From contig NC_042999.1 in NCBI RefSeq assembly GCF_006345805.1, forward strand, positions 35,650,001-35,714,000: DNA of 64,000 bases. The letters run 5' to 3'. The notes beneath the pieces were generated by a model that searched no databases, was not told the DNA's origin, and worked only from the letters and a program-made list of their open reading frames with translations. Shown here piece after piece: positions 1,162 through 55,281 of the stretch. This stretch comes from Octopus sinensis (Eukaryota). The translations under genes and the position numbers were made by a program. The first letter of the stretch is position 1. Each line of letters starts with the position of its first letter.

Positions 1162-1954
1162 ATATTATGCTAATTAATGATGTTTGAAATGAACAGACAA
1201 TCAATTTTAGTTGATAGACAAGACCTTATATTACTGGTTCCAGTTAATGACTTTTAATATGTTGCAGCAAAGTATAAGTTAACATTGAACCTTGTCAACA
1301 ACTTAATTTTTTTTATTCTTGATATTTTTGTATGCACCTGTACAGGTGACACGTAAAAGACACCTGTGCCAGTGGCAATTAAAAGACACCTAGTACACTC
1401 TATGGGGTGGTTGACTTTAAGAAGGGCATCCAGCCATAAAAACCAAACCAAAACAGACTGGAGCCTGGTGCAGCTCACCAGTTCCATCAAACGTTCTTAC
1501 TTATGTCAGCATGAAAAATGGACACTAAATGATGAGTTGTTAATGGCCTTGATTATTATATGAATATACAACTATTTATCCCTCTTACTCAAACTTCTTG
1601 GGCAACATGTCTACTTAGAAACCACTTCAATATATCCTCCTATGGACTTTATGATAGTGTCAGATCAAATCAAGAATATAAGTACTAAAACACATGCACG
1701 TACATGTGTGTGTGTGAATATTTACTTAGTGTTCTCACCCTTGTCATTTCAAGCAATGATTATGTTTATGCATTTACATCCTCCTGTAAACGATATTTCA
1801 TGTAGCTCTGCAGTTTTATTTGATTTGGTGTGTGAAGACTAGTTCAATAAAAATACCTCGCTAATCTAACAGATAAGAGTTGGCAATAGGAAGGACATTG
1901 ACCATAGAGTGCTGTCTCAATAAGACTCTTCTAATCCATGCTAGTATGGAATAA

Positions 1955-2381
1955 GCTTTATATGCACTTTCTGACAAGTTGTGGTGCACCTGAGCACTGT
2001 ATACCATAATTTCATTATTATTAAAATAGAACTCGTTCACTCTTAGAATTACTAGATACCTGGCAGTATTATGGTATACTACCAATTGTGAAAAATAAAA
2101 AGGAAACATTTTTTCATGCTGAGAGTTGCAGAAGCATGGAACAGACTGCCAGCATCAGTTGTTAGTTGTCGGAGCACTGCATCCTTCAAAACTTCCATGC
2201 TTTCTGAAATTCGCCAACACTACACTTGACTTTCTCCCCTCCATATACACACAAGCATGTATCTGACTCATACGTTATTCGCTTTCCAGACATTTGTACA
2301 TTACTGCTTATGCTTTATACGCACTTTCTGACAAGTTGTGGTGCACCTGAGCACTGTATACAATAATTTCATTATTATTAT
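1955..2381 (+). mobile_element. CR1/L2-type LINE 3' ends (two in tandem) with (ATT)n tails
   Basis: FFMLRVAEAWNRLPASVVSCRSTASFKTSM resembles a CR1-like RT C-terminus; the 3' UTR end ...gcactgtatacaataatttc(att)n occurs at about 2020 and 2380. Confidence 0.75.
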
Positions 2382-2493
2382 AAAAAAAAAAAACATGAAT
2401 AAATAAAATTATAGTTTAATTTTGTTCATTAAAACAAATCTTTCTTGTGTCCAAATTATGATGATGATAATTTCAAATCCTGTTTTGTGACAG

Positions 2494-2616
2494 GGCTCAG
2501 CGTAAAGCCAAGTGGGAGCAGGAAAAAGTCGAAAGGGAGCTGATGCAGAAAGAGATGAGAGAGAAGAAGATGCAAGAAAATCAGATGACTGCTGCTGAGA
2601 GAGAAGCTGCACGAAG
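2494..2616 (+). CDS. UBXN4: UBX domain-containing protein 4 (erasin), internal exon (coiled-coil region)
   Basis: cag|G...AG|gtaaat. Translates (R)AQRKAKWEQEKVERELMQKEMREKKMQENQMTAAEREAAR; its phase joins the next exon in frame. Confidence 0.9.
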
Positions 2617-4832
2617 GTAAATATCAAATTTAGAATTAGGTCACATTTTCTTACTATTTTACATATCAAAGAAGGTAAAAAGAGAGAAAATAGAAAGCTT
2701 CTGACAATGCTGATAGTTTTATAAAACCTTTATATTTCGGGCACAAAGCCCATCAGAAGAAGAATGTCTAGTTTATGCAGGTTCTATTAACCCATTCAAA
2801 TCCCCTAGCATTATGTAGCAGTCACTCTCTAAGCATAGGTGTAATTGTGTCAATTACACTGATGCTTGGAGAGTGACTGCTGCATATAAACAAAAGAATG
2901 AATGTTGGTCAGCAAGCTTTTTTAAGAATATTATTTGAAATGTTCTATAAAGATGTTTATGCTTCATCTTTACAGGAAACAGTAACTAATTGGCTGAGTC
3001 ATAAATTCATCAGACAAATTGTTTCATAATATTTTATTCTGGCACCTTGCATTCTAAGTTCAAATCTCACTGGAAGTCAACTGGCTGAATCATAAGTGCA
3101 TCACACAAATTGCTTTGCAGTATTTTATCCTGGTAACTTGCATTCTGAGTTCAAAGCACATTGGTGTCATCCTTCCAATGTCACTAAATAAACTACCAAT
3201 TTAGTCGTGACGGACTGACAGAAATGGTAGAATGTTAGACAGAATACCTTGCTGTATTTGTTTTGACTCTTTGTATTCTGGGTGCAAATCCCATCTTAAT
3301 CTATGTCAGTGGTAGGCTTATTCCACTGTATGATTTTACACTACCACGTGGTACTTCAGTTATCTTTTAGCAGAATCCTCTCATTTGCAAGCATTTGGGT
3401 GAGGTCTCCACATTCAGGATAACCTTCTCCTTTTCTTCTTACAGTCATGGAGGTCTTGTAAGGGATCTTGAGTACTGTAGTCCACCTGTGACTAAGCAAT
3501 AAAAAAAAAAATACAGAAAAGAAACTAGATATGCAGATCAGTTCCTATGGATCAATGTCATTTGAGAAATCCTTCTATCTATTTTTGCCACCCACTATTC
3601 CTCAGTTACCTCCTCCATGAACCAACAATTCAGTGCATCATGTTTATGTGTATATGAAATTTAATTTAATTTATTTTGTTTTCAAAATTTCTAATCTTTT
3701 CGACTTTGTGAATAAGTGGTAATGTTTGAGATTGTTAACATTAACAGCCATTGAATAAATGGTAGCATTTTCAATTGTTAATAGTCCGAAAACCGTTTTT
3801 CTCCTATCTATACAAGTATACCATTTCATTACTGTTATTTTGCAAACCTAGGATGGTATTTTTTTTCCTTTTTAGGATTCCAGTTGGTTACAAACATTTA
3901 CTAATTTAAAATGAGCCCTATGGAGCAGATTTTATCAGAGAAAGGTCCTAGGCACATTTATTGAATAGATTTTTCTATTGTTTAGATAGAAAACTTTGAA
4001 ATGGAAAAGATGTTCTGAATTGTCATGCATGGAATTGTTGTTAGTGAACTGTCACATGGGCAATTATTGGGGTGCCACCTCCTCCATAGAGTTCTGTCAG
4101 AAGCAACTGTCATTACATTTTCCTGCTGGATTCCTAAACATGACCGACTGAAACTATGGATTTATCCAAATGTCTTGTCCTTGGTTTACCCTCAGTTTTC
4201 TGCTGGTTGACTTGGCTTGAAGATTCTGTAAAATAATCCTTTCTACTATGGGTACAAGGCCTGAAATTTTTTTGGTAGGGGGAGTCTAGTCAGTGACATC
4301 AACCCCAGTGTTCAACTAGTACTTATTTTATCAACCCCAGTTCTCAACTGGTACATATTTCATTGACCCTGAAAGGTGAAAGGCAAAGTCAACCTTGGCA
4401 GAATTTGAACTCAGAACACGAAGAAGGATAAAATATTTAGCAGCATTTGTCCCAGTGTGCTAATGATTCTGCCAGCTCATTGTCTTAATTCTGTGAAATA
4501 ATCCTTTCTTATATAGGCACAAAACCTGGAATTAGTGGGAAGGGGGCTAGTCAATTTCATTGACTCTGAAAGGATAAAAGGCAAAGTCAACCTTCGTGGA
4601 ATTCAAACTCAGAACATAAAAACGGACAAAATACTGCTAAGCAATTTGTCCAGCATGCTTAATGATTCTGCCAGCTCACTGCATTAATTCTGTGAAATAT
4701 TAAAATGAAATATCTATTTGGTTGTCACTTTCTGATTATTTTATCTAATTATGAATATGGATTTTATAAAGTGTCTTACTTTCTCATTGTTATGTTTTTA
4801 TATATATATATATACTTTTAAACTATTTCCAG

Positions 4833-4935
4833 AGAAATCTCCCGAATTCAGTTTCGCTTACCAGATGGTTCTGCAATAACGCAACAGTTTAAATCCTCTG
4901 AACCACTTTCAGTAGCCTGCAGTTTTATTTCTCAA
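4833..4935 (+). CDS. UBXN4: UBXN4 exon, N-terminal half of UBX domain
   Basis: ccag|...|gttagt. Translates EISRIQFRLPDGSAITQQFKSSEPLSVACSFISQ, with the UBX RIQFRLPDG motif. Confidence 0.95.
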
Positions 4936-5673: not shown

Positions 5674-6040
5674 TATCCGAATCGTGGCCGATGCCAGCGC
5701 CGCCTCGACTGGCTTCCGTGTCGGTGGCACGTAAAAAGCACCATCCGAATCGTGGCCGAAGCCAGTGCCGCCTCGACTGGCTTCCGTGCAGGTGGCACGT
5801 AAAATGCACCAATCCGACCATGGCCGATGCTAGCCTCGCCTGGCTTCAGTGCGGGTGGCACGTAAAAAGCACCCACTACACTCACGGAGTGGTTGGCGTT
5901 AGGAAGGGCATCCAGCTGTAGAAACATTGCCAGATAAGACCGGAGCCTGGTACAGCCTCCTGGCTTCCCAGATCCCCGGTCGAACCGTCCAACCCATGCT
6001 AGCATGGAGAACGGACGTTAAACGATGATGATGATGATTG
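5674..6040 (+). mobile_element. SINE-like family B
   Basis: About 3 tandem units, then the body and (GAT)n tail. Confidence 0.8.
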
Positions 6041-6139
6041 AGATGCTAGTAGTTTTGATAATTATATACAAGACTTGTGATTTTGTAATTTGTCAAAATT
6101 TTTTTTTTCTCAATGTTGATTTCCTGTTGCATTTTCTAG

Positions 6140-6262
6140 CATGCTGGTTCAAACATCCAGCTGTATACAATGTTCCCAAAGCGAACTTTCACTGCTCAGG
6201 ACATGACTTCAAGTTTATTATCTCTTGAACTTGTACCCAGTGCTGTTATTCTCGTCATACCG
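6140..6262 (+). CDS. UBXN4: UBXN4 exon, C-terminal half of UBX domain
   Basis: tctag|...|gtaagt. Translates HAGSNIQLYTMFPKRTFTAQDMTSSLLSLELVPSAVILVIP (FPR-like loop, LxPS motif). Confidence 0.95.
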
Positions 6263-7570: not shown

Positions 7571-8174
7571 TACAGGACTGTTAAAATAGTTGTTCTAATA
7601 ATTCATATGCATATATAATACACGTATATACATTATGCATCATATATTATACACAAACCTACAAATCACTGTGGTAACTGAATAGTTAAATATATTGGGT
7701 TTACAGGTCATTATTTCAAAAGCATTTCTTGGGTTTGTATTAGCTCTTTGGATAAGAATGTTCCATTTGTGTTGACTTACTTTACCACAAATAAACCAAT
7801 AATTGTGGTGAGTTGTTGCTGTCGGGATATTCAACTCTAAGAATATTAATCACTGAGCAGCTGATTAGCATTTACATGTTAGGGTAGATAGACAAACAAG
7901 TCCACTTTCAGTTTTATATGCTTACACATACATACAAATATACAGATGTAGATCTACTCAGGTGCATACACATAAACATAATATATGCTTGACCAGATGA
8001 TTTCTTTCAAAATTGGTCCTCACAAAGATTTTTGCATGAGCGGTCTTTTGTTTTTAAATTCAGTGTTGCTAACATCATTTGTAATGACGTAGATGTATGT
8101 GTGTGTGTGTGAGTGTACATATACACCTTTAAGAAATAGATATTGGTCTGTACCCAAAGTTGTCTTATATTTAA

Positions 8175-8471
8175 CTAGCAGTTTCGCCCGGCGTTGCTCG
8201 GGGCTTGTAAGGGAAATAACTATATAAGCATTTTTAGAGAGTTACTTCCCTTATATAATAGCAAAAAAATGCATTAAAAATGGGAAAAAATTATGGTAAA
8301 TTTTTTTTTAAATCGTAGACTCATCATGGACGCGCGCTAATACCCAGAAGGGCTCGATATGAATCACGACTATAAGATACCCGCTTTTGGTTAAACTGCA
8401 CTGCAAAACATGGGAGTAAGGAATCTAAATCGTAGGAGACAGACACACAACTTCACTTTTATATATAAAGA
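8175..8471 (-). mobile_element. Non-autonomous Helitron-like element
   Basis: On the minus strand it runs A|TC...CCCGAGCAACGCCGGG hairpin...CTAG|T; no TSD. Confidence 0.75.
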
Positions 8472-8947: not shown

Positions 8948-9096
8948 TTAAGGCCCATCCTCAGAAGCAAATTACAACCCGCGCACACACACACACATAT
9001 ATCATTATCATCTGTCTTCCATGCTAGCATGGGGGTTGATGGGGTAGTGGTGACTGTTGGTGCAGTGTTTTTATTTGTTTTTATTCTTATTTCCAG

Positions 9097-9296
9097 ATAA
9101 AATCAGTTTTGGCTCCAAAAACGTACTCCAACAATTTTCTTGGTATGATACTAGCACCTCTATTTACATTGTTGAACTTTATATATGGAATAATATTTGG
9201 AACTCCAGCCAATCCAAACCCAGGAGATAGTAGAACCACAAATAAAGACAATGAAAACACAGTTCCATCGAGTACAACTTCTCAACGGCCGTCAAC
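9097..9296 (+). CDS. UBXN4: UBXN4 exon, hydrophobic ER-membrane segment
   Basis: ccag|...|gtaagt. Translates IKSVLAPKTYSNNFLGMILAPLFTLLNFIYGIIFGTPANP...; phases fit both neighbours. Confidence 0.9.
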
Positions 9297-10013: not shown

Positions 10014-10423
10014 AGGCGCAGGAGTGGCTGTGTGGTAAGTAGCTTGTTTACCAACCACATGGTTCCGGGTTCAGTCCCACTGCGTGGCACCTCGGGCAAG
10101 TGTCTTCTACTATAGCCTCGGGCCAACCAAAGCCTTGTGAGTGAATTTGGTAGACGGAAACTGAAAGAAGCCTGTCGTATATATGTATATATATATATAT
10201 GCGTGTGTGTGTTTGTGTGTCTGTGTTTGTCCCCCTAGCATTGCTAGACGACCGATGCTGATGTGTTTATGTCCCTGTTACTTAGCGGTTCGGCAAAAGA
10301 GACCGATAGAATAAGTACTGGGCTTACAAAAGAATAAGTCCCGGGGTCGAGTTGCTCGACTAAAGGCGGTGCTCCAGCATGGCCGCAGTCAAATGACTGA
10401 AACAAGTAAAAGAGTAAAGAGTA
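10014..10423 (+). mobile_element. SINE family A, full length
   Basis: GGCTGTGTGG and GGTTCAGTCC box-like head, CORE-like CTCGGGCAAGTGTCTT, TA/TG tract, (AAGAGTA)n tail. Confidence 0.88.
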
Positions 10424-12177: not shown

Positions 12178-12577
12178 AAAATGAATATAATTTATATTTA
12201 TTGGCACAGGCCATGACACATAGAAGGCACCCACTACACTCTTGGAGTGGTTGGCATTAGGAAGGGCATCCTGCCATAGAAACCATGCCAAATCAGACTG
12301 GGACCTGGCTTACCAGTTTCAGTCAGACGATCTAACCCATGCCAGCACTGAAAGTAGACACTAAATGATGATGATGTAGCATGGCTGTCTAGTTAAGAAA
12401 CTCGCTTTTCAACCATGGTCTTAGATGATCCATTGTTAAAATTTAGCTTTAATAGAAAAATATAAATATAGCAAAACTGAAAGCATTGTCATAATAAAAT
12501 GTACCTTTCAAATAAACCTGAATACTTACTTTTCCTTTTTCTTCCCTCTCTTTAAATTTTTTTACTCTCTTCTTCAG

Positions 12578-12701
12578 AGCTTACAAGAGACGTTCATCAC
12601 CGATAAGTCGTCAAGAAGGCAACATCCATAAGTTTACCAGTAGTCAAGATGATGACGACGATCAGTCAACTTGGAATGGGAACTCTACGCAGCAAATGTG
12701 A
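12578..12701 (+). CDS. UBXN4: UBXN4 terminal coding exon
   Basis: ttcag|. Translates AYKRRSSPISRQEGNIHKFTSSQDDDDDQSTWNGNSTQQM-stop; TWNGNSTQQM is the characteristic UBXN4 C-terminus. Confidence 0.97.
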
Positions 12702-17243: not shown

Positions 17244-17394
17244 TTAAACCATGAGCACCACCATAAAAGTAGTGATAAGCCATATCCGTGATCTAGTTTT
17301 GATGATCTGTTGGAGTCATTTCACTTATAATTGCTAATGCTTCTGTAAGAAGCATGAATACCAAAGTCACGAGTATGTTGATGGTGTGTAAGAA

Positions 17395-17578
17395 TGTGTG
17401 TGTATATATATATATACATGTATATGTGTATGTATATATACTTTTATATATATGCATGTATATATATAGATATGTGTGTATATATATAGATGTGTGTGTG
17501 TGTATATATATATATATACATATATATATACATGTATGTATATATATATGTATATATACATATATATATACACACATG

Positions 17579-17621
<43 letters not shown>

Positions 17622-17754
17622 CATGTATGTATATATATATCTATATATATATTACACATGTATGTATCTATATATATATATATATATACTGTATGTATAT
17701 ATATATATATATCACATGTATGTATATTATATATATAATATATATATACACATG

Positions 17755-17791
<37 letters not shown>

Positions 17792-17831
17792 GTATGTATA
17801 TATATATATATATATATATATCACATGTATG

Positions 17832-17864
<33 letters not shown>

Positions 17865-17996
17865 TATACACATGTATGTATATATATATTATATATATAT
17901 AATATATATATATATATATAACACATGTATGTATATTATATATATACATACACATGTATGTATATATATATATATATATATATATACATACACATG

Positions 17997-18035
<39 letters not shown>

Positions 18036-18055
18036 GTGTATATATATATATATAG

Positions 18056-18089
<34 letters not shown>

Positions 18090-18090
18090 G

Positions 18091-18149
<59 letters not shown>

Positions 18150-18150
18150 G

Positions 18151-18187
<37 letters not shown>

Positions 18188-18380
18188 CACATATGTATGT
18201 ATATATATATACACATATGTATATATATATACACATATGTATGTATATATATATATATACACATATGTATGTAATATATATATATTACACATATGTATGT
18301 ATATATATATATACACACACATGTATGTATATATATATACACATACATGTATGTATTATATATATATACACACACATGTA

Positions 18381-18412
<32 letters not shown>

Positions 18413-18415
18413 CAC

Positions 18416-18453
<38 letters not shown>

Positions 18454-18620
18454 ATATATATATATATACATGTATATATATATAATATATACACATATGT
18501 ATGTATATATATATATATACACATATGTATGTATATATATATATACACACACATGTATGTATATATATATATGTATATATATATATACACATGTATGTAT
18601 ATGCATATATATGTATAATG
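17395..18620. repeat. Compound (TA)n microsatellite punctuated by CACATGTATG
   Basis: Seen directly. Confidence 0.95.
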
Positions 18621-20324
18621 TAATAGCTTCTCTTTCAAACATATATTGAAGATACACTTACACTCCAGTTTGATCTATTTTGATTTGCATTTTTTTTTCA
18701 TATTTCCTTAACTGGTGAATTATATTTTAGTTGGAAACATTAATATTCCTACATAAGTGGTCTCCCTTCTCAAAATAAGGTTGTCATCCATATAGCTTTG
18801 AAAAATTAACTCTGTAACTGTAGACTTAAATTTCATGGTTATTTATTTCAGTAATGTTGTTAAATATCTATCAAAAAATAGAATTGGTATTTTCTGCAAG
18901 TCTTGTTGCCTCAATAAACTTGACATATCTCAACAAGAAACAGTTCAAACGTGATATTCTACAACAATAGATAGCTTGCTATATAAAAGTGCTTTCCGCA
19001 TTCAAATGTAATGAAATTTTGAGTGGGTGTATCTGATTTGTGTAATAAAAAGACCAAGGGATTTAGGAATACTACAGGCACAGACATAGCTTTATAGTTA
19101 TGAAGTTTGCTTCAGAATCATATGGCTTTGGGCTTGGTCCTATTGCACAGTACCTTGGGCAAGTTTCTTTTATTATGTTGTCCAATGAATTTTGAGTGGT
19201 AGTTGACAAACTGAAAGATGTCCATTGTGAATATGATTGTGTGTTTTTATGAATGTTAACAACTTGTTCTGAGCTATTGTTAGAAATGGTGTTTGTTGAC
19301 ATTTCCTGTCAACCAGTTATCCACTAGCTTTGCACTTTTGAATTAATCTGGAATAAGAAGAAAAAAAATTGAAAAATATTTTATTTGAAAAAACAAGCAA
19401 AAGTTGATGAAAGTTAAGCATTTAGCCACAAAAGTCCTGCTTCAGTTACATCCTGTGTAAGCCATGGTAGCATGGAAAATGAAACGAAGGAACTATCAGT
19501 GTTTTAAACATAAAAGAACTAATAAAGGAAATACAGGGGGGAAAAATCCTTAAATAAAAAAAGAAACTCAAACATAGTTATGCCATCAATACAACATTGC
19601 ATGTGCATACAGACACACACGGTCCAACTTTCATTCCTATAGACAAGTTGCTGCCTCTTATTCATATTAAAGTGGCTTTTAAAATAAATGTTATCTGTGC
19701 AGGTTAACACAAATCTAAGTTTTATTGTCTTCCATCATGACTATTACAATCCTAGATTTATGTGGTGCTTTATCTAAAATAAACAGCAACTTATAAATAA
19801 AATAAAAAACAGCTGAATCGAAAGTTAAGTATCAGCGACCAATCTCTGCATGGCCACGTTTTTATCATTGAGATGCAAATGGCCAGTGCTTTAATTGCCA
19901 ATTGTTATTAATATTTTAATGGATTTACAGCACATTGCTTCTTGTTACATTCTTATCTGATTTTTTTTTTTTTTACCTTTTTTGGTGGTGGGATGCAATT
20001 ATAGTATTCCAGTTCAATAAACTATTGACTTTTGACTTATAAAATCACTTGTATATGAATGCAACAAACTTTGATTTGAATTAAACATTGGTGGATGCAA
20101 TATTCAAGATGTGTGTGTGTGTGTGTATGTGTATGTATGTGCACATGTAATTGTAAGCTGTTGCTGTTCTAGAAAAACACCTGAAGATTGGGTTCAATTT
20201 TCATCTAAGGCAGCTTACACTGCACTTTGTATTAAAACAGATAAGATTGAAGCAATAAATTCCTAACCAATGTTTTTCTGTGATTACTCAGTATTGATTT
20301 CGAGTTCTTGTTTATTCACTTGTT

Positions 20325-24039: not shown

Positions 24040-24405
24040 ATGCTTAGCGGCATTTCTTCTGGTTTTACGTAGTGAGCAAAAATTCCGTCGAGATCGACTT
24101 TGCCTATCACCTTTTCGGGGTCGAAGTAACGGACTAAACTCCTCCAGCAAACTTCCAGGCCTTGTACTTATATTATTTGTTTCTTTATTACCCACAAGGG
24201 GCTAAACATAGAGGGGACGAACAAGGACAGACAAAATGAATTAAGTCGATTACATCGACTCCAGTGCGTAACTGGTACTTAATTTATCGACCCCGAAAGG
24301 ATGAAAGGCAAAGTCGACCTCGGCGGAATTTGAACTCAGAACGTAGCGGCAGACGAAATACGGCTGCGCATTTCGCCCGGAGTGCTAACGTTTCTGCCAG
24401 CTCGC
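24040..24405. mobile_element. Two family C SINE pieces in opposite orientation in the PSMB6 promoter
   Basis: GTCGACTTTGCCTTTCATCCTTTCGGGGTCGA-type core present on both strands. Confidence 0.7.
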
Positions 24406-24497
24406 TAGAAAGGGCAAGAACAAAGGGACATGAAATCTTTGGTTGTTACCAATGAAATCAGAATGGATATTTAAACAAGGGAGCTAACCGCGATTAA

Positions 24498-24536
24498 CCG
24501 GAAACAGTTACATGCTAGTTATTATCCAAGATGGCT
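24498..24536 (+). promoter_or_regulatory. PSMB6 proximal promoter motifs (ETS-like CCGGAA; YY1-like CAAGATGGC over the ATG)
   Basis: Motif matches seen directly; function is inferred from housekeeping-promoter architecture. Confidence 0.4.
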
Positions 24537-24632
24537 TCTGTGATGACTGGCGGTTTGTCTTATTCCAGCATGAGCAATCAGATTTATAGCGACATGGGGA
24601 TGGACTGGATGAACCAAGAACAGACCACAGGG
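24531..24632 (+). CDS. PSMB6: Proteasome subunit beta type-6 (beta1), exon 1 (propeptide)
   Basis: ATG...|gtaagt. Translates MASVMTGGLSYSSMSNQIYSDMGMDWMNQEQTTG and ends at Gly-1, just before catalytic Thr1. Confidence 0.9.
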
Positions 24633-24748
24633 GTAAGTGATGCCATTATCATCTAAAACATATACAGATTCTTTTAGATCTTTATTTAAATCTATAGCTA
24701 TGACTAATCTTCATTGATTCCTTTATCAACATCACATAAGAGCTGTTT

Positions 24749-25140
24749 AATAATAATAATAATAATAATTTTCTTGCATCTTCTTCTCTCTCATCTCTTT
24801 CTGCATCAGCTCCCTTTCGACTTTTTCCTGATCCCACTTGGCTTAACGCTGAGCCCTGTCATGTCACAAAACAGGATTTGAAATTATCATCATCATAATT
24901 TGGACACAAGAAAGATTTGTTTTAATGAACAAAATTAAACTATAATTTCATTTATTCATGTTTTTTTTTTAATAATAATAATGAAATTATTGTATACAGT
25001 GCTCAGGTGCACCACAACTTGTCAGAAAGTGCATATAAAGTGTATGCAGTAATTTAGAAATGTCTGGAAAGTGAACAGAGTATGAGGCAGATACATGCCT
25101 GTGTGTGTATGGAGGGGAGAAAATCAAGTGTAGTGTTTGC
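24749..25140 (-). mobile_element. LINE 3' end plus transduced UBXN4 intron/exon fragment with a new (ATT)7 tail
   Basis: Reverse complement aligns to 2216-2581, including the acceptor AG and 88 nt of exon; no TSD seen. Confidence 0.85.
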
Positions 25141-25322
25141 CTACGGTCAATTCATTAGCTATCTATAATGTAATTAACTGATGTCTGTTTCCTGATTTTC
25201 ATTTTTCTCTAATGAATAACTTTATTTTTCTTATTTATTCTTTTACTAAGAGATTACCGGTACCTTGGTAATCTCGACAATAGCTTTTTTTGTAAGTAAT
25301 AGACACCTGATTTATAGAAATA

Positions 25323-25716
25323 CTAGCAGTATCGCCCGGCGTTGCTCGGGTTTTTAAGGGAAATAACTATATTAGCATTTTTAGAGAGTTATAACCAAAA
25401 GGTAGCAAAAAAATGCATTAAAAATGGAAAAAAAATGATGGTAATTTTTTTTTAAATCGTTGACTCATCGTAGACATTTTTAGAGAGTTACTTCCCTTAT
25501 ATAATAGCGAAAAAAGGCATTGAAATGGAATAAAATGTTAAATTATTTTAAAAATCGTAGACTCATCGTAGACGCGCGCTAATACCCAGAAGGGCTCGAT
25601 ATGAATCACGACTATAAGATACCCGGTTTTGGTTAAACTGCACCGCAAAATGTGGGAGGAGTTAGGAATCTAAATCGTAGGAGACAGACATACAACTTCT
25701 CTGTTATATATAAATA
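25323..25716 (-). mobile_element. Non-autonomous Helitron-like element with internal duplication
   Basis: Same family as 8175-8471; 3' CTAG and hairpin present; an internal segment is repeated. Confidence 0.7.
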
Positions 25717-25849
25717 TATTAACTTTCCATGTCGGCTCGAGTATAAAATTTGCGTTTTTTTTTACTTATGTAATTTTAGTTTTTCTATTTTCTAAACATT
25801 GGTTTGATCTGGAGGAAGCAGTGCTCATGGCCTTTACGTATCCTCTTAA

Positions 25850-26070
25850 CCCTTTAGTGTTTGCATTATTCTGCCAAAATTAATGCCTTTTCATCCACAT
25901 TGTTTTGAACTAATCATGCATTATCTTGTAGCTATGAGATTTTGATGAGGTAGCTGTTAATTTTTCAAACGATATTGTAGGGTTGGTGTGAGAGACCAGA
26001 TCTGACCAGTTTGAACATAAAACAGGCAGAATACTTTTAGCTGGATATGGCCGGTTTAAATGCTAAAGAG
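25850..26070. mobile_element. piggyBac-type MITE
   Basis: TTAA|CCCTTTAGTG...TGCTAAAGAG|TTAA. Confidence 0.8.
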
Positions 26071-26279
26071 TTAAATCAGTGAGATTGATCCTGTTCCTTT
26101 TGTGTTCGCTCGTTCTCTTACAAATGACAGTACCGTCTCATTCAAATCGCACCCTACCGTCTTAACATAAGGTTACTCTGGGCAGTTGTGAACCTAGATA
26201 TTTTGTGTTTGAAAAACAAAAATAGATGGTTTGATTTGCTCGATCAAATTGTCGAAACTAAGCAATAACATAGTCAAGG

Positions 26280-26840
26280 AGGGAATTTCTAAGAGACAAC
26301 TGAGTGAATGATTTTATATCTGAGGGTGTTTGACGGAACAACTTCATTCCAGTCAGTTGGGTGGGCATGTTTTGAATGGTGCCTAGGCTGCCTGTGTGTA
26401 TAGCAGCAGCACTGATTGTTTTAGATACGAGTCTCAATTGAACTTTGTGGAGGATTAGTAGATGTCGAAGGCTGGGTACTACTAGCGAACAGTGGTCCCG
26501 GTGCGCGCACTCGCGCTTCCGCGCTAGCTAGTCGTTACTAGTCGATCCTACAACGACTACGTAGAAAAGTAAATAAAACAAAATAAATAATTTTTGTTAA
26601 ACAACGTAAAACACAAAGTAAATAATTTTTTAAACAAAGTAAATAAAACACAAAAACACAAAGTAAGGATACACTAGTCATGACTAGCTAGCGCGGATGA
26701 TCGAGTACGCGCGTGCGCGCACCGGGACCACTGTTCGCTAGTAGTACCGAAGGCTGAAATACTTCTTCATACAACATTTGTTAGTTGATGTGTCTTGGTC
26801 CGAGAGATCCTCAGTGATGGTGAGGTCTACCATCTGTAAG
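26280..26840 (-). mobile_element. Degraded RTE-like LINE fragment hosting the MITE
   Basis: Weak conceptual translation (LYEE...LHKVQLRLV) with frameshifts. Confidence 0.35.
26475..26748. mobile_element. MITE with 36-bp perfect TIR and 8-bp TSD
   Basis: TIR GGTACTACTAGCGAACAGTGGTCCCGGTGCGCGCAC; TSD GAAGGCTG at 26467 and 26749. Confidence 0.9.
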
Positions 26841-27673
26841 GAAGGGGTTACGGTTTTAGGGCCAGTGTTGCGGAAAAAAGTCAAAATTGAAGAAATTCTG
26901 GGAGGGGGTGGGGGGAATTTTCACTGCCGATTTTCGGCAATTTTCCGGAACCTCCGGCAAAAAAAAGATTGGTGATAGAAAGAGCATCGAACCCTAGAAA
27001 CCATAGCAAAACTGACACTGGAGTTCAGCATAACCTACTGCTTGTCAGATGCTATCAAATCATCCAACCCATGCCAACATGGAAAATAGATTTTAAATGA
27101 TGATGATTTCTAACAAACTGCCCTTCACTGTTACATTTCCACTACTTTAACAGGATGTTGTTTCTTGTTATATTTTTAATTATCATGAAAATAGTAAATG
27201 CTGCCTGAAATATTCATATTAATGTAGAATAATTTTTTTAAAGTGTAGTATTGCATATAACTTCCACATAACTTATTGGGAAAAAAAATGATCCCAAACT
27301 TTTTCAAGCCCTTTCGTTACCAACCTGGCCGAAACTAGCTCTGGTTCTGAGTACAAATGTCTTGTTTTCATAAGTTTTAAATTAAAACCTTCCACCAAAG
27401 CTTAGTCACAATTTATGTTCCTAACACTAGCTGAATGATAACTAAGTTATTTTACTAAATTCTTTGTTATATTTAAAGTAATTGAAAGAAACACAGAGCA
27501 TCTCAAAATAAATACAGTAATGGCGGTGCCCCGGCATAGCCACAGCTTGTGAGCTGAAACTAGATAAAAAAAAAAAAAAAAATGAAAGGGTTAATCAGGC
27601 AATTCAGTTGCATATTTAAATTCAGTGCCCAAGCAGAAAGTAGAACTTAATATTTTATAAATATTTCTTCCAG

Positions 27674-37595: not shown

Positions 37596-37829
37596 GCCCA
37601 GTTGATTAATCAGCCGAAATTGCGAGGATGATGCAGTTCTTGACTGAAGATAAAAGGCTTCGAATGACCCATCCTTGTTTTTTTGTATTGTCTATCTGGT
37701 TGTTTTGTTGTCCCTTTTTGTATCACATAGTTGTCCAGGTGTTTTGCATTCTTGTCCCATTTTGTATTTTATTTTATATATATATATAGCGGCATACGTA
37801 CACTTTGTTCTCTTATACACACACAAACA

Positions 37830-37911
37830 CATATATGTATATATGTATGTATGTTTATATGTATGTATTTATATATGTATGTATGTATATATATATATAT
37901 GTATATGTATG

Positions 37912-37942
<31 letters not shown>

Positions 37943-37956
37943 GTATATATATATGT

Positions 37957-38011
<55 letters not shown>

Positions 38012-38019
38012 TATGTATG

Positions 38020-38084
<65 letters not shown>

Positions 38085-38239
38085 GTATGTATATATATGT
38101 ATATATATATATGTATGTATATATATGTATATATATATATGTATATATATATATATGTATGTATGTATATATATATATATGTATATATATATATGTATGT
38201 ATGTATATATATATATGTATGTATGTATATATATATATG

Positions 38240-38270
<31 letters not shown>

Positions 38271-38781
38271 GTATATATTATATATATATGTTATATATAT
38301 ATATATGTATATATATATATGTATGTATGTATATATATATGTATATATATATATGATGTATGTATGTATATATATATATATGTATATATATATATGTATG
38401 TATATATATAATGTATGTATATATATATATGTATATATATGTATGTATGTATATGTATGTATGTATATATATGTATATATATATATGTATATATATGTAT
38501 GTATGTATATATATGTATATTTATATATATGTATGTATATATATATATGTATGTATGTATATATATATGTATGTATGTATGTATATATATATGTATGTAT
38601 GTATATATATATGTATGTATATATATATGTATGTATATATATATGTATGTATATATATATGTATGTATGTATGTATATATGTATATATATATGTATGTAT
38701 GTATGTATGTATATATGTATGTATGTATGTATATATATATGTATGTATGTATATATATATGTATGTATATATATATGTGTG

Positions 38782-38817
<36 letters not shown>

Positions 38818-38840
38818 TATATTGTATATATATATATATA
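37830..38840. repeat. Compound (TA)n/(TATG)n microsatellite
   Basis: Seen directly. Confidence 0.95.
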
Positions 38841-40810
38841 TGATGGGCATCTTGTAGTTTCCATCTACCAAATCCATTCGCAAGGCTTTGGTCAGCCCAG
38901 GGCTATAATACAAGACACTTGCCCCAAGTGCCAGGAGTGGGAATGAACCTGGAACCATATGATTTGGAAGCAAACTTTTTAACCATACAATCTTTCCTAC
39001 ACCATAAACTTCATTGTCATTATTGTTATGAGATGTAGCAGTTTTATGTTTTTTTAATTTTTGTTATGGCTTAGAGGAAGAGGTGTGGTATCCTTAACCA
39101 TTGACATGTCTGTGTTGATATCTTTAGTCAAAAGACCTGGTCTAATTAGTTGCAACGAAGTGGACTGGACTCTAATAAAGTTAGCCAAGGGACAAGTGGC
39201 AGTGTTAAACTGGGCAAGGAATTAGGTCTACCCCATTGAATAAGTACACTTCACTTGATGGCTTTCTATACATTTTCTGTCATTTTAATCTCAATGAATT
39301 CATACACTTCATTAGAAGTTGTGACTTTCACAATAACAAGTCTATTTTATGCCAGACTGTGTCAATAATGAGAAGACACACACACACTCAAGCATATGTA
39401 TACATACATATACTGTTAATGAGATTATCTCTTCAAAAATCAAAAAGTGGATAACCAAAGACAACAGCTTTGAAACCTCCAGCTTATCATCATCGTTTAA
39501 CATCCGTTTTCCATGCTAGCATGGGTTGGACGGTTCGACTGGGGTCTGGGAAGCCAGGAGGCTGCACCAGGCTCCAGTCTGATCTTGCAGTGTTTCTACA
39601 GCTGGATGCCCTTCCTAATGCCAACCACTTCGTGAGTGTAGTGGGTGCTTTTTACATGTCAGGGGAGGTTGGCAGCGGCCACGATTGGTTGGTGTCTTTT
39701 ACGTGCCACCGGCATCAGCCACGTTCAGATGGTGCTTTTTACGTGCCACCGGCACAGGTATCACAACTACAATTTCCATTTGATTTCTTTGATGTTGATG
39801 TACTTGACTCAATAGGTCTCTTCAAGCACAGCAGGTCGCCTTACGATCCAAGGTAAGCACAGCTGGCCGTCCTGTGATCTTATAAATTTACATTTATACC
39901 AATAATGATCGATGCTCTTAGTCTTATGAGTTAATGCTTAAGTGACAATCTGAATAAGCTGGAGTTTTCAGCAACAGAAATCAACCAGCTAATATGCTCA
40001 TTAAAAATATAATTTGTAGGTGGAATGATAAAATTATGCATGAGTTTTCTCAAGTTGAAAATGTGAATTTGTTTTTGCTATCTACATTTCTTCAATGGAA
40101 CTTAGAAACCAGCTCTTTTGTTACCGGTAGATTTCAAATCATTAAAAATAGAAGAGAACACACACGTACACACACACACGTACGCACGCGCACGAGTTTT
40201 CCATCTGCCAATTTCTGTATGTATATATAGTTAATCCATGCATACATATATATATACATATGCTGTAGAAACACTGCAAGATCAGACTGGAGCCTGGTGC
40301 AGCCTCCTGGCTGATTAATCCACTGCGAGGATGATCTGGTTCTTGACTGAGGATAAAAGGCTTCGAATGACCCATCCTTGTTCTTTTGTATCGTCTATCT
40401 GGATGTTTTGTTGTCCCTTTTTGTATCACCTAGTTGTCCAGATGTTTTGCGTTCTTGTCCAATTGGTCAGTCTGAACACCATACAGGAACAAACTCGAAA
40501 TGACATTATTGCTAAGCGATCTCCTTAACCAAACACTGTTGCCTGCTTACTATAATATTGTAGTCATGTTGGTATATATATACATGTTTTACTGGAGTTA
40601 AATGGAAGTCATTGTTTTTAGAGTAGGGTCAATCGAATGATGACAGTTTTTAGTTTATACTTCAACGTTAAAACACAACAGAGTTGTTCCCCTTGCCACT
40701 TAAATGACTATAAATGCTTCAGTTGTGAAGATTATATTTCTCATACATTTCGTTTTGGGATTTGGTTTGCAAGATTCTTTATGTGAGTTTGTGTGTTGAA
40801 GCATATTCTG

Positions 40811-53829: not shown

Positions 53830-54130
53830 AATGGCATCGAATACTTTAATATCATTTGCTTGCGCTTGAGATCAAGGCGCTTCCACATTCCCGAGGCTGC
53901 AGCCCATATTGGCACTCAATATCTTGCTCTGGTTCGTCTCCGGATCATGTCAGTCGGATCGAGAGGGTCTGTGAGATACTGTGCAAGCCTTATTGGACCT
54001 ACAGTTTTAGTTAGTGTAATCGCCGGCGAGTGGGCTTTCCGATGGCCGGTCATATAAAAGGGCACTACGGCGAGCATGGAAGCCGCGGGCGCGAAATCGG
54101 GTGAAGCTGACTGCGAATGCAATAGCATCA
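53830..54130 (+). mobile_element. Possible degraded non-LTR RT C-terminal fragment
   Basis: Weak motifs (KAL...EAAAHI...RIERV...NRRRV) spread across frames. Confidence 0.3.
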
Positions 54131-54214
54131 TGCACGAGCATTATTGGCTTTTTCTTGGGCAATGATCAGTTATGGTCTTCCTTGTCACCAGTGGACAGCT
54201 ATCATCATCACGCA

Positions 54215-54890
54215 TGTATGTATGTATGTATGTATGTATGTATGTATGTATGTATGTATGTATGTATGTATGTATATGTATGTATGTATGTGTATGTATG
54301 TATGTATGTATGTGTGTGTGTATGTATGTATGTATGTATGTATGTATGTATGTATGTATGTGTGTATGTATGTATGTATGTATGTATGTGTGTGTGTATG
54401 TACGTATGTATGTATGTATGTGTGTGTATGTATGTATGTATGTATGTATGTATGTATGTGTGTGTATGTATGTATGTATGTATGTATGTGTGTATGTATG
54501 TATGTATGTATGTATGTATGTATGTATGTATGTATGTGTGTATGTGTGTATGTATGTATGTATGTATGTATGTATGTATGTATGTCTGTGTGTATGTATG
54601 TATGTATGTGTGTGTATGTATGTATGTATGTATGCATGCATGTATGTATGTATGTATGTATGTATGTGTGTGTGTGTATGTATGTATGTATGTATGTGCG
54701 TGTGTGTATGTATGTATGTATATATGTATGTATGTGTGTGTGCGTGTATGTATGTAAGTATGTATGTGTGTGTATGTATGTATGTATGTATCTGTGTGTA
54801 TGTATGTATGTATGTATGTATGTGTGTGTGTGTATGTATGTATGTATGTATGTGTGTATGTATGTATGTATGTATGTGCGTATGTATCTA
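54215..54890. repeat. (TATG)n/(TG)n microsatellite
   Basis: Seen directly. Confidence 0.95.
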
Positions 54891-55281
54891 TATTTAGTCA
54901 AAAACACGTACGTGCACGCGCAATTGTATATACTGTTCTTGGACTTCGCAAAGATTTTCAACAAAATCGGTCAGTACAGTCGACCCCAGTACTTGACTGG
55001 TACTTATTTTATCGACCCCGCAAGGATGAAAGGTAAAGCGGCGGAATTTGAACTCAGCTCGCCGCCTTATTTTTATCTCTAATAACAAACTCTCAGAAAT
55101 AAAGCTCATGTCACTTAACGTTGTATTAAGTATAGATATGTCCTATACTTTGCATGTTTATACTTATGCCAGGGTACAAATTCAATTGAGAGGATATTCT
55201 TTGATAAACATCGCCACATGTCAATCTTACAACCCCTCATTTCTTATCTTATCGGAAATTAAAGTTCTAAAATGAATTGTA

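What the first reader, a model, noticed from the sequence alone, without database searches (positions are those of the whole stretch)
24749..25140. LINE-mediated 3' transduction of a UBXN4 exon fragment, antisense inside PSMB6 intron 1
Seen: on the minus strand this segment is the LINE 3' UTR plus (ATT)n, then about 110 nt of UBXN4 intron, the acceptor AG and the first 88 nt of the 2494-2616 exon, then a second (ATT)7 tail that is absent at the source. The host part differs from 2384-2581 by 3 substitutions and one 5-nt insertion. There is no TSD. Known: 3' transduction is well described for L1 but much less for CR1/L2-type elements, which use short-repeat tails and often lack TSDs. Inference: an unspliced read-through RNA was retroposed about 22 kb away. 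PSMB6 pre-mRNA would therefore carry near-perfect antisense to UBXN4 mRNA, potentially forming dsRNA (ADAR or siRNA substrate) between two genes of the same p97-proteasome pathway.
Basis: partly seen in the sequence, partly recalled or inferred. Interest (0 to 1): 0.75.

Follow-up and report, generated by a model that had tools for sequence, protein, structure and literature searches.

The report
Chimeric LINE insert carrying UBXN4 exon piece
A 392-base insert in the first intron of the octopus proteasome gene PSMB6 joins a LINE retrotransposon tail to an inverted copy of a UBXN4 intron-exon piece from 22 kb away. It is real and recent, but its LINE half does not come from the LINE next to UBXN4, so it is not a simple 3' transduction.

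Summary
Window 24768-25140 is the reverse complement of 2213-2581 (349/374 identical). It is bounded by (AAT)7 at 24749-24769. The window is Octopus sinensis. PSMB6 and UBXN4 are correctly identified. The insert is present with the same structure in O. vulgaris. It is cleanly absent from the orthologous site in O. bimaculoides, which has no (AAT)n there. So it is a real, lineage-specific insertion and not an assembly artefact.

Divergence from the source is bimodal: 4 substitutions in 261 bp (host part plus the last 50 nt of the LINE and its tail) against 14 in 108 bp (upstream LINE 3'UTR), Fisher p = 2e-5. Other family copies show that source and insert each carry at least 4 private changes there. 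The insert's LINE part therefore comes from a different element, here called LINE X.

My best reading (about 0.4) has two steps. An ordinary 5'-truncated CR1-like LINE X inserted first. A break in its (ATT)n tail was then repaired by copying about 200 nt from the homologous LINE 22 kb away and rejoining to the remaining (ATT)7. Reverse-transcriptase template switching (about 0.3) and true transduction followed by gene conversion (about 0.1) remain possible. The antisense complementarity to UBXN4 (86/88 nt) is real, but any function is untested.

The parts
24749..24769 (-). Distal (ATT)7 tail of the insert, (AAT)7 on the plus strand. It is absent from the source and from the O. bimaculoides empty site. 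Its last 2 nt (AT) overlap the exon homology as microhomology.
24768..24855 (-). Copy of the first 88 nt of the UBXN4 exon 2494-2616, 86/88 identical. One change makes a stop codon (AAA>TAA). It is antisense to PSMB6 transcription.
24856..24960 (-). Copy of the last 100 nt of the UBXN4 intron (2394-2493), including the acceptor AG. It has 1 substitution and a 5-nt TGACA tandem duplication.
24961..24982 (-). Internal junction, A10 followed (towards the LINE) by (ATT)4. The source has (ATT)3AT + A12. This shows that the LINE tail and the host flank were copied as one contiguous block from the source locus.
24983..25032 (-). Last 50 nt of the LINE 3'UTR, identical to the source. It is also identical or nearly so in all close family copies, so its origin (LINE X or source) cannot be assigned. 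The breakpoint of the chimera lies here or in the adjacent tail.
25033..25140 (-). 5'-truncated LINE 3'UTR from a different element (LINE X). There are 14 substitutions in 108 bp against the source LINE, shared by O. sinensis and O. vulgaris. It lacks the source's private changes.
2101..2381 (+). Source-locus LINE copy in the UBXN4 intron: CR1-like ORF C-terminus ending at 2229, 3'UTR, and (ATT)3AT tail at 2371-2381.
2382..2581 (+). Donor of the host part: A12, the last 100 nt of the intron, and the first 88 nt of the UBXN4 exon 2494-2616. No AATAAA or ATTAAA lies before the end point at 2581.
24531..24632 (+). PSMB6 exon 1. Intron 1 runs from 24633 to 27673 and contains the insert.

Best explanation
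The insert arose in two steps at the DNA level, after the split from O. bimaculoides and before the O. sinensis / O. vulgaris split.

1. An ordinary 5'-truncated copy of a CR1-like LINE (LINE X, about 160 nt of 3'UTR plus an (ATT)n tail of roughly 11 units) inserted antisense into PSMB6 intron 1. This step is inferred.
2. A double-strand break in its (ATT)n tail was repaired by synthesis-dependent strand annealing.
   - The LINE-side end invaded the homologous LINE copy 22 kb upstream in the UBXN4 intron. The two share 50 nt of 3'UTR plus the tail, all identical.
   - The new strand then dissociated and was joined to the other broken end, the remaining (ATT)7, through 2 nt of microhomology (AT).

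Shown here: the chimeric origin, the contiguous copying from the source locus, the derived state, the timing and the junction sequences. Inferred: the order of events, the break, and the repair pathway.

The product is a neutral-looking intronic insert. It places 86/88 nt of perfect-strand antisense to UBXN4 in the PSMB6 pre-mRNA.
For: - Chimerism. There are 14 substitutions in 108 bp over 2213-2320 against 4 in 261 bp over 2321-2581 (Fisher p = 1.8e-5). The likelihood change point is at 2320.
- Polarity. At 2230, 2246, 2275 and 2308 the source alone is derived. At 2215, 2254, 2266 and 2311 the insert alone is derived.
- Homology for invasion. The last roughly 50 nt plus the tail are identical in all four close copies and well conserved in more distant ones.
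- The internal junction (ATT)n-A(n)-CATGAAT is the source's own genomic junction. The event was therefore guided by LINE homology and was not an independent insertion.
- The second (ATT)7 is explained without new assumptions, as the rest of LINE X's own tail. Another family copy has at least 8 units (L005).
- The one tail substitution (A>T) completes a fourth ATT unit. This is expected if the LINE X / source junction lies in the tail.
- Donor and recipient are 22 kb apart on one chromosome. Homology search in break repair favours nearby sequence, whereas retroposition has no known local bias.
- A tract of about 200 nt matches the 'several hundred nucleotides' typical of SDSA before D-loop dissociation, and ectopic repeats are known donors (PMC7407515).
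- CR1-type LINEs are thought to need a 3' hairpin plus microsatellite at the RNA end (PMC8665684; PMC3747384). This argues against priming 200 nt downstream of them.
Against: - No intermediate allele (LINE X plus tail, without the host fragment) was seen. Only three species could be compared.
- The final structure is equally what a reverse transcriptase that switches templates at (AUU)n repeats would give.
- The orthologous source locus in O. vulgaris and O. bimaculoides could not be fetched. A later change of the source LINE is therefore excluded only by parsimony.
- Extension from an invading end with a terminal mismatch (T opposite the source's A) is required if the junction is exactly at (ATT)4|A10.
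- Detection was conditional on both copies lying in one 64-kb window. This weakens the proximity argument.
Confidence: 0.4

Rival explanations
1. A single retrotransposition event with template switching. Target-primed reverse transcription started normally on the (AUU)n tail of a LINE X RNA and made (ATT)7. The reverse transcriptase then switched to nascent, unspliced UBXN4 pre-mRNA at an AU microhomology (position 2581). It copied the exon, the intron and A12. On reaching the (AUU)3 tail of the intronic LINE it realigned onto the LINE X RNA tail, finished the 3'UTR, and was 5'-truncated.
For: - It gives the same final structure as the DNA-level model, including the chimeric LINE part and the (ATT)4 unit.
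- Both switch points lie at AU or ATT sequences.
- Reverse transcriptases of LINEs with repeat tails are thought to slip on those repeats (PMC3747384).
- A nascent transcript of a gene 12-22 kb away would be physically close, which would explain the proximity.
- The 5' truncation and the weak or absent TSD fit target-primed reverse transcription.
Against: - It needs two switches in one event, the first supported by only 2 nt of homology and landing at an internal site of a foreign RNA.
- From my own knowledge, LINE reverse-transcriptase template jumps are mostly end-to-end.
- No second example could be looked for with the sequence on hand, about 150 kb of octopus DNA.
Confidence: 0.3
2. A read-through or pre-mRNA-derived RNA containing the 2.2-kb LINE 3' end, the intron and 88 nt of exon was retroposed as a unit (true 3' transduction). 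Afterwards the upstream LINE part of either the source or the insert was overwritten by gene conversion from a third family member.
For: - The contiguous copy of LINE tail plus flank.
- A LINE-type tail at the new 3' end.
- The 5' truncation.
- The empty site in O. bimaculoides.
Against: - It needs an extra conversion whose boundary happens to fall at the conserved 3' segment.
- Both copies carry at least 4 private changes in the 108 bp.
- No polyadenylation signal lies before 2581, and there is no template for a de novo (ATT)7.
- CR1/L2-type elements are held to need their hairpin and repeat at the RNA 3' end.
- The chance of a retrocopy landing within 22 kb of its source in a genome of 2-3 Gb (size from my own knowledge, not measured here) is about 1e-5, before allowing for detection bias.
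Confidence: 0.1
3. A replication-based or other DNA-level inverted duplication of the whole 2213-2581 block (for example fork stalling and template switching) with no LINE X, in which (AAT)7 arose by slippage at the junction. Alternatively, an assembly artefact.
For: The orientation is inverted and the distance is short.
Against: - It does not explain the bimodal divergence.
- It does not explain why one end coincides with a LINE-type tail in the LINE's own orientation.
- An artefact is excluded. The same structure, 99% identical, is present in the independent O. vulgaris assembly GCA_951406725.2.
Confidence: 0.05

Closest known systems
L1 3' transduction (Moran 1999; Goodier 2000; Pickeral 2000, as cited in PMC3812793)
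   Same: The LINE 3' end, its own tail, contiguous downstream genomic sequence and a second tail lie in one insert. The insert is 5'-truncated and absent at the orthologous site of a relative. It moves an exon fragment into another gene.
   Different: - The LINE part is not derived from the LINE next to the transduced sequence.
- The element is CR1-like with an (ATT)n tail, not poly(A).
- There is no downstream poly(A) signal and no clear TSD.
- Donor and target are only 22 kb apart.
Ectopic, repeat-primed break repair (SDSA ended by end joining; templated insertions), reviewed in PMC7407515
   Same: There is one-sided homology supplied by a dispersed repeat. A few hundred nt of donor flank were copied and the donor is unchanged. 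The far junction has 2 nt of microhomology. Donor and recipient lie in cis, and small slippage errors are present (the TGACA duplication and the A-run length).
   Different: The break and the pre-insertion allele are inferred, not observed. The break would lie in a LINE microsatellite tail. I did not find this described for such elements in the papers searched.
Chimeric retrocopies made by LINE reverse-transcriptase template switching (for example U6-L1 chimeras; from my own knowledge)
   Same: Two RNA-derived parts from different loci are joined within one insertion that carries a LINE tail.
   Different: In the known chimeras the LINE or mRNA is the 3' part and the captured RNA is the 5' part, after one end-to-end jump. 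Here the captured RNA is internal, between the tail and the 3'UTR of the LINE, which needs two switches.
CR1 / L2 'stringent-type' LINEs with a 3' hairpin and microsatellite tail (PMC8665684, PMC3747384)
   Same: - A conserved 3'-terminal segment of about 50 nt followed by a short-repeat tail in six of seven copies (degenerate in L004).
- From memory, the ORF C-terminus (…VQRRATR…FFxxRxxxxWNxLP…FK…) resembles the chicken CR1 C-terminus.
   Different: The repeat unit is ATT, not the avian 8-mer. The hairpin prediction is weak and shows no covariation. No full-length element was examined.

Membership tests
LINE 3' transduction | The transduced segment is the genomic sequence directly 3' of a LINE copy, copied contiguously with that LINE's tail. 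| tested here: met
   The junction (ATT)n-A(n)-CATGAAT… is shared by the source (2371-2400) and the insert (24955-24982).
LINE 3' transduction | The LINE part of the offspring derives from that same source element and shares its private substitutions. | tested here: not met
   There are 14 differences in 108 bp against 4 in 261 bp (p = 1.8e-5). The insert lacks the source-private states at 2230, 2246, 2275 and 2308.
LINE 3' transduction | A new LINE-type tail follows the transduced segment. | tested here: met
   (ATT)7 at 24749-24769, absent from the source and from the empty site.
LINE 3' transduction | A target-site duplication flanks the whole insert. | tested here: inconclusive
   Only a 5-bp TGTTT at 24744-24748 and 25134-25138. 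It overlaps homology to the LINE (source TGTTG). O. bimaculoides has TGTGT once.
LINE 3' transduction | The transcript ends at a downstream polyadenylation or termination signal. | tested here: not met
   No AATAAA or ATTAAA lies in the 40 nt before 2581. This may not apply to CR1-type elements.
LINE 3' transduction | The insert is absent at the orthologous site of a relative. | tested here: met
   In O. bimaculoides L003 the flanks abut at positions 10210-10212.
CR1/L2-type LINE | A conserved 3'-terminal element followed by a short tandem-repeat tail. | tested here: met
   Seven copies were aligned. The last roughly 50 nt are conserved, and (ATT)3 to (ATT)8 or more follows in six of them (degenerate in L004).
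CR1/L2-type LINE | A stable 3' hairpin supported by covariation. | tested here: inconclusive
   RNAalifold predicts 13 pairs at -7.7 kcal/mol with no compensatory changes.
CR1/L2-type LINE | An ORF2 with APE endonuclease, reverse transcriptase and a CR1-type C-terminal domain. | tested here: inconclusive
   Only the C-terminal 45 aa lie in the window. Relatives P0126-P0131 (E down to 3e-13) carry a C-terminus that I recognise from memory as CR1-like. Pfam has no model for it. The endonuclease and reverse-transcriptase domains were not examined.
SDSA / templated insertion at a break | Donor and recipient share homology on one side of the inserted tract. | tested here: met
   The LINE 3' end plus tail is identical over 61 nt (2321-2381), and the similarity upstream is about 87%.
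SDSA / templated insertion at a break | A microhomology or blunt junction on the other side, with the donor left unchanged. | tested here: met
   There are 2 nt (AT) at 24768-24769. The source exon is intact and in frame.
SDSA / templated insertion at a break | The recipient existed before the event without the tract (here, a LINE-X-only allele). | not testable with these tools
   Only O. sinensis, O. vulgaris (both filled) and O. bimaculoides (empty) could be fetched. ORF-based look-ups of other assemblies found nothing.
Natural antisense / dsRNA regulatory pair | Extended complementarity between two transcripts. | tested here: met
   86/88 nt over the exon, predicted duplex -165.6 kcal/mol. 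The full 373-nt insert segment and the 369-nt source segment cofold at -580 kcal/mol.
Natural antisense / dsRNA regulatory pair | Co-expression plus editing, small RNAs or an expression effect. | not testable with these tools
   No RNA data are available here. There is no excess conservation of the insert between O. sinensis and O. vulgaris (2 in 392 bp against 11 in 908 bp).

The most novel reading that the evidence does not exclude
A CR1-like reverse transcriptase, while integrating at PSMB6 intron 1, switched templates at its (AUU)n tail. It captured nascent, unspliced pre-mRNA of the neighbouring UBXN4 gene and then returned to its own RNA. This would be a route to exon-fragment shuffling in a non-L1, 'stringent' LINE, one that I did not find described in the papers searched. 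A further and less likely step is that the resulting intronic antisense is an ADAR or siRNA substrate coupling two genes of the p97-proteasome pathway in an animal known for heavy RNA editing.
Probability: 0.25. Interest if true: 0.55.

Novelty: new member of a known kind. Interest (0 to 1): 0.3.

Why it matters
This is a clean, datable case with an empty site in O. bimaculoides and a filled site in O. sinensis and O. vulgaris. A dispersed LINE copy guided the movement of an intron-exon fragment into a neighbouring gene.

It also shows that a structure which looks like textbook 3' transduction can be a chimera. The test is to compare the LINE part of the insert with the presumed source element. 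If the DNA-repair reading is right, LINE microsatellite tails act as break and repair sites that shuffle nearby sequence. If the template-switch reading is right, CR1-type elements can capture host RNA despite their strict 3'-end requirement.

The functional consequence is untested. The insert places 88 nt of antisense to UBXN4, and a polypyrimidine tract followed by AG, in the PSMB6 pre-mRNA. It is probably neutral.

Tried and rejected
- (AAT)n already present at the target. Rejected: the O. bimaculoides empty site reads AAGAGCTATGTGTCCTTACAG with no AAT repeat.
- Assembly artefact. Rejected: the same insert is in the independent O. vulgaris assembly at 99% identity with no gaps.
- ADAR hyper-editing of an RNA intermediate as the cause of the divergent LINE part. 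Rejected: the 14 differences include 6 transversions and run in both directions.
- A (TAA)n-targeting Dong/R4 element, considered because Dong-R4 has the most recently active LINE insertions in O. vulgaris (PMC13282606). Rejected: there is no repeat at the 5' flank or at the empty site, and the ORF C-terminus is CR1-like.
- Fetching the orthologous UBXN4 source locus. This failed. Two protein searches with UBXN4 exon peptides did not return the octopus protein. ORF-based look-ups and two metagenome DNA scans found nothing.
- Rfam scan of the whole window: no hit.
- More copies of the LINE in the window and the orthologous loci. Only three were found in the window. Four more 3' ends, plus partial copies, came from loci fetched through LINE ORF fragments. 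Only one of them (L004) is a close relative.

Full report
**1. What is there**

A self-comparison of the window shows that 24768-25140 is the reverse complement of 2213-2581, with 349 of 374 positions identical and E = 5e-161.

Read on the minus strand, the insert consists of these parts:
- a 5'-truncated LINE 3'UTR, 25140 down to 24983;
- (ATT)4, 24982-24971;
- A10, 24970-24961;
- the last 100 nt of a UBXN4 intron plus a 5-nt TGACA tandem duplication, 24960-24856;
- the first 88 nt of the exon 2494-2616, 24855-24768, 86/88 identical;
- (ATT)7, 24769-24749.

At the source the exon continues as GAAAAT|CAGATG. There is no ATT repeat there and no AATAAA or ATTAAA upstream of the end point.

**2. 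Genes and organism**

- The six PSMB6 exons, spliced by hand, give a protein 100% identical to O. sinensis proteasome subunit beta type-6.
- The window is identical to CM016861.1 of GCA_006345805.1.
- Intron 1 runs from 24633 to 27673. The insert starts 116 bp into it and is antisense to PSMB6.
- Upstream, on the same strand, exons at 2494-2616, 4832-4933, 6139-6261, 9096-9290 and 12577-12698 encode a protein with a UBX domain.
  - Its best PDB matches are UBXD2/UBXN4, E about 1e-17, far ahead of FAF1.
  - It aligns end to end with a UBX-domain homologue (P0124, unnamed in the database) that ends in the same motif TWNGNSTQQM.
  - The copied exon is the one directly before the UBX-domain exon.

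**3. The insert is real and derived**

- The O. vulgaris PSMB6 locus (L002, an independent assembly) has the same structure. It is 99.0% identical over 1300 bp with no gaps.
- In O. bimaculoides (L003) the two flanks abut: AAGAGCT-A-TGTGTCCTTACAGTCAATTC. The flanks are 90% and 94% identical to O. sinensis, and there is no AAT repeat.
- The insertion therefore happened after the O. bimaculoides split and before the O. sinensis / O. vulgaris split.
- The (ATT)7 did not pre-exist at the target.
- A 5-bp TGTTT occurs at both ends, and O. bimaculoides has TGTGT once. It overlaps sequence that also matches the LINE (TGTTG in the source), so a TSD is neither shown nor excluded.

**4. The key new result: the insert is a chimera**

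I used O. vulgaris to remove lineage-specific changes. After that, the ancestral insert differs from the source as follows:
- at 14 of 108 positions in 2213-2320 (13%);
- at 4 of 261 positions in 2321-2581 (1.5%).

Fisher's test gives p = 1.8e-5. A likelihood change point falls at 2320, with LRT = 19. The 1.5% is about what the 1.0% divergence between O. sinensis and O. vulgaris predicts for a duplication slightly older than that split. The 13% exceeds even the divergence from O. bimaculoides.

To polarise the 14 sites I fetched further family copies. I found them through LINE ORF fragments returned by a profile-free search with the 45-aa ORF end.
- In the alignments the source alone is derived at 2230, 2246, 2275 and 2308.
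- The insert alone is derived at 2215, 2254, 2266 and 2311.
- The remaining sites are ambiguous.
- The closest relative (L004, O. vulgaris, another chromosome) agrees with the source at 8 sites, with the insert at 5, and with neither at 1.

So the two LINE segments are independent family members. The upstream LINE part of the insert was not copied from the LINE that sits next to the UBXN4 exon.

The last roughly 50 nt of the 3'UTR plus the tail are identical in the four close copies and well conserved in more distant ones. The breakpoint therefore lies somewhere in 24971-25032 and cannot be placed more exactly.

The differences include 6 transversions and go in both directions. ADAR hyper-editing of an RNA intermediate does not explain them.

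**5. The LINE**

- The ORF end at 2092-2226 (…FFMLRVAEAWNRLPASVVSCRSTASFKTS…) has relatives with E down to 3e-13.
- Their longer C-termini (for example P0127: …VRPHLEFASPVWNP…LEAVQRRATR…FFTLRIAETWNKLP…) look, from my memory of chicken CR1, like the CR1/L2-group C-terminal domain. Pfam has no model for it.
- Six of the seven aligned copies end in (ATT)3 to (ATT)8 or more; the L004 tail is degenerate.
- A hairpin is predicted in the conserved end, but it has no covariation support.
- CR1 elements are recently active in O. vulgaris (PMC13282606).
- CR1 and other 'stringent' LINEs are thought to need their 3' hairpin and repeat as the recognition and priming site of the reverse transcriptase (PMC8665684; PMC3747384).

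**6. Mechanism**

Any model has to explain five things:
- (a) contiguous copying of LINE tail plus flank from the source locus;
- (b) a LINE 5' part of different origin;
- (c) a second (ATT)7 that was neither at the target nor at the source;
- (d) a 2-nt AT overlap at the exon/(ATT)7 junction;
- (e) a distance of only 22 kb, in inverted orientation.

I favour a two-step DNA-level history (confidence about 0.4).
- First came an ordinary insertion of LINE X with an (ATT)n tail of about 11 units.
- Then a break in that tail was repaired by strand invasion into the homologous LINE end 22 kb away.
- About 200 nt of repair synthesis ran into the UBXN4 intron and exon.
- The strand dissociated and was joined to the remaining (ATT)7.

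This uses known steps. SDSA tracts run to several hundred nucleotides, and dispersed repeats act as ectopic donors (PMC7407515). The model explains (c) and (e) without extra assumptions. It also fits the small detail that the only substitution in the tail region turns (ATT)3AT-A into (ATT)4.

The main rival (about 0.3) is a single retrotransposition event. In it the reverse transcriptase switched from the LINE X tail to nascent UBXN4 pre-mRNA and back again at the ATT repeats. The end product would be identical.

It also conflicts with the presumed 3'-end requirement of CR1-type elements.

I could not separate the first two models. The orthologous source locus and species that might carry an intermediate allele could not be fetched.

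**7. Consequences**

- On the PSMB6 sense strand the insert supplies 86/88 nt of antisense to the UBXN4 exon, with a predicted duplex energy of -165.6 kcal/mol.
- Complementarity to the UBXN4 pre-mRNA extends over about 370 nt.
- The exon fragment has a stop codon and no coding potential.
- There is no sign of constraint. Between O. sinensis and O. vulgaris there are 2 differences in 392 bp of insert against 11 in 908 bp of flank.
- The dsRNA, ADAR or siRNA idea is possible in principle but has no support here.

**8. Verdict**

This is a genuine, recent, LINE-guided duplication of a UBXN4 intron-exon fragment into PSMB6 intron 1. It is chimeric and is not a simple 3' transduction. It is a new instance of known kinds of event, either repeat-primed templated repair or a chimeric retrocopy. 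Interest is moderate to low unless a genome-wide survey shows that CR1-type elements do this regularly.

Noticed in passing
window 1943-2025 (+): A third, severely 5'-truncated tail fragment of the same LINE family, with (ATT)3. It lies only about 75 bp upstream of the 5' end (about 2101) of the source LINE copy, in the same orientation. It is 67/68 identical to the insert over the conserved end.
   Followed up: partly
window 25323-25580; also 8174-8331; L002 3975-4356: Another repeat family with an internal tandem duplication of about 100 bp (25375-25475 and 25475-25573). It starts 180 bp from the insert. It has no match anywhere in the O. bimaculoides locus L003, so it is a second lineage-specific insertion in PSMB6 intron 1.
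   Followed up: partly
window 24770-24812 (+): On the PSMB6 sense strand the antisense exon fragment reads as a pyrimidine-rich tract of about 40 nt followed by CAG (…TCTTTCTGCATCAG|CTCCC). This is a potential cryptic 3' splice site in intron 1.
   Followed up: no
window 24300-24410: A SINE-like repeat (…GGAATTTGAACTCAGAACGTAGCGGCAGACGAAATAC…) directly upstream of the PSMB6 start codon region. Similar SINE-derived ORFs recur throughout the window.
   Followed up: no
window 17300-18700, 37700-39000, 54100-55000: Kilobase-long TA/CA-rich low-complexity arrays. They generate the longest spurious ORFs in the window.
   Followed up: no
L003 1-5273 (-): The O. bimaculoides annotation places a DAGAT-family gene 4.7-10 kb upstream of PSMB6. 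No gene is called in the corresponding O. sinensis or O. vulgaris flanks (L001, L002).
   Followed up: no
window 2382-2393; L008 about 5720-5735: In two of the seven LINE copies the (ATT)n tail is followed directly by an A-run of 9-12 nt. This may reflect an A-rich target preference or polyadenylated templates.
   Followed up: no
protein database: Word-indexed searches with UBXN4 exon peptides did not return any octopus UBXN4 protein, although PSMB6 from three Octopus species is present. The gene model may be missing from, or different in, the collection.
   Followed up: partly
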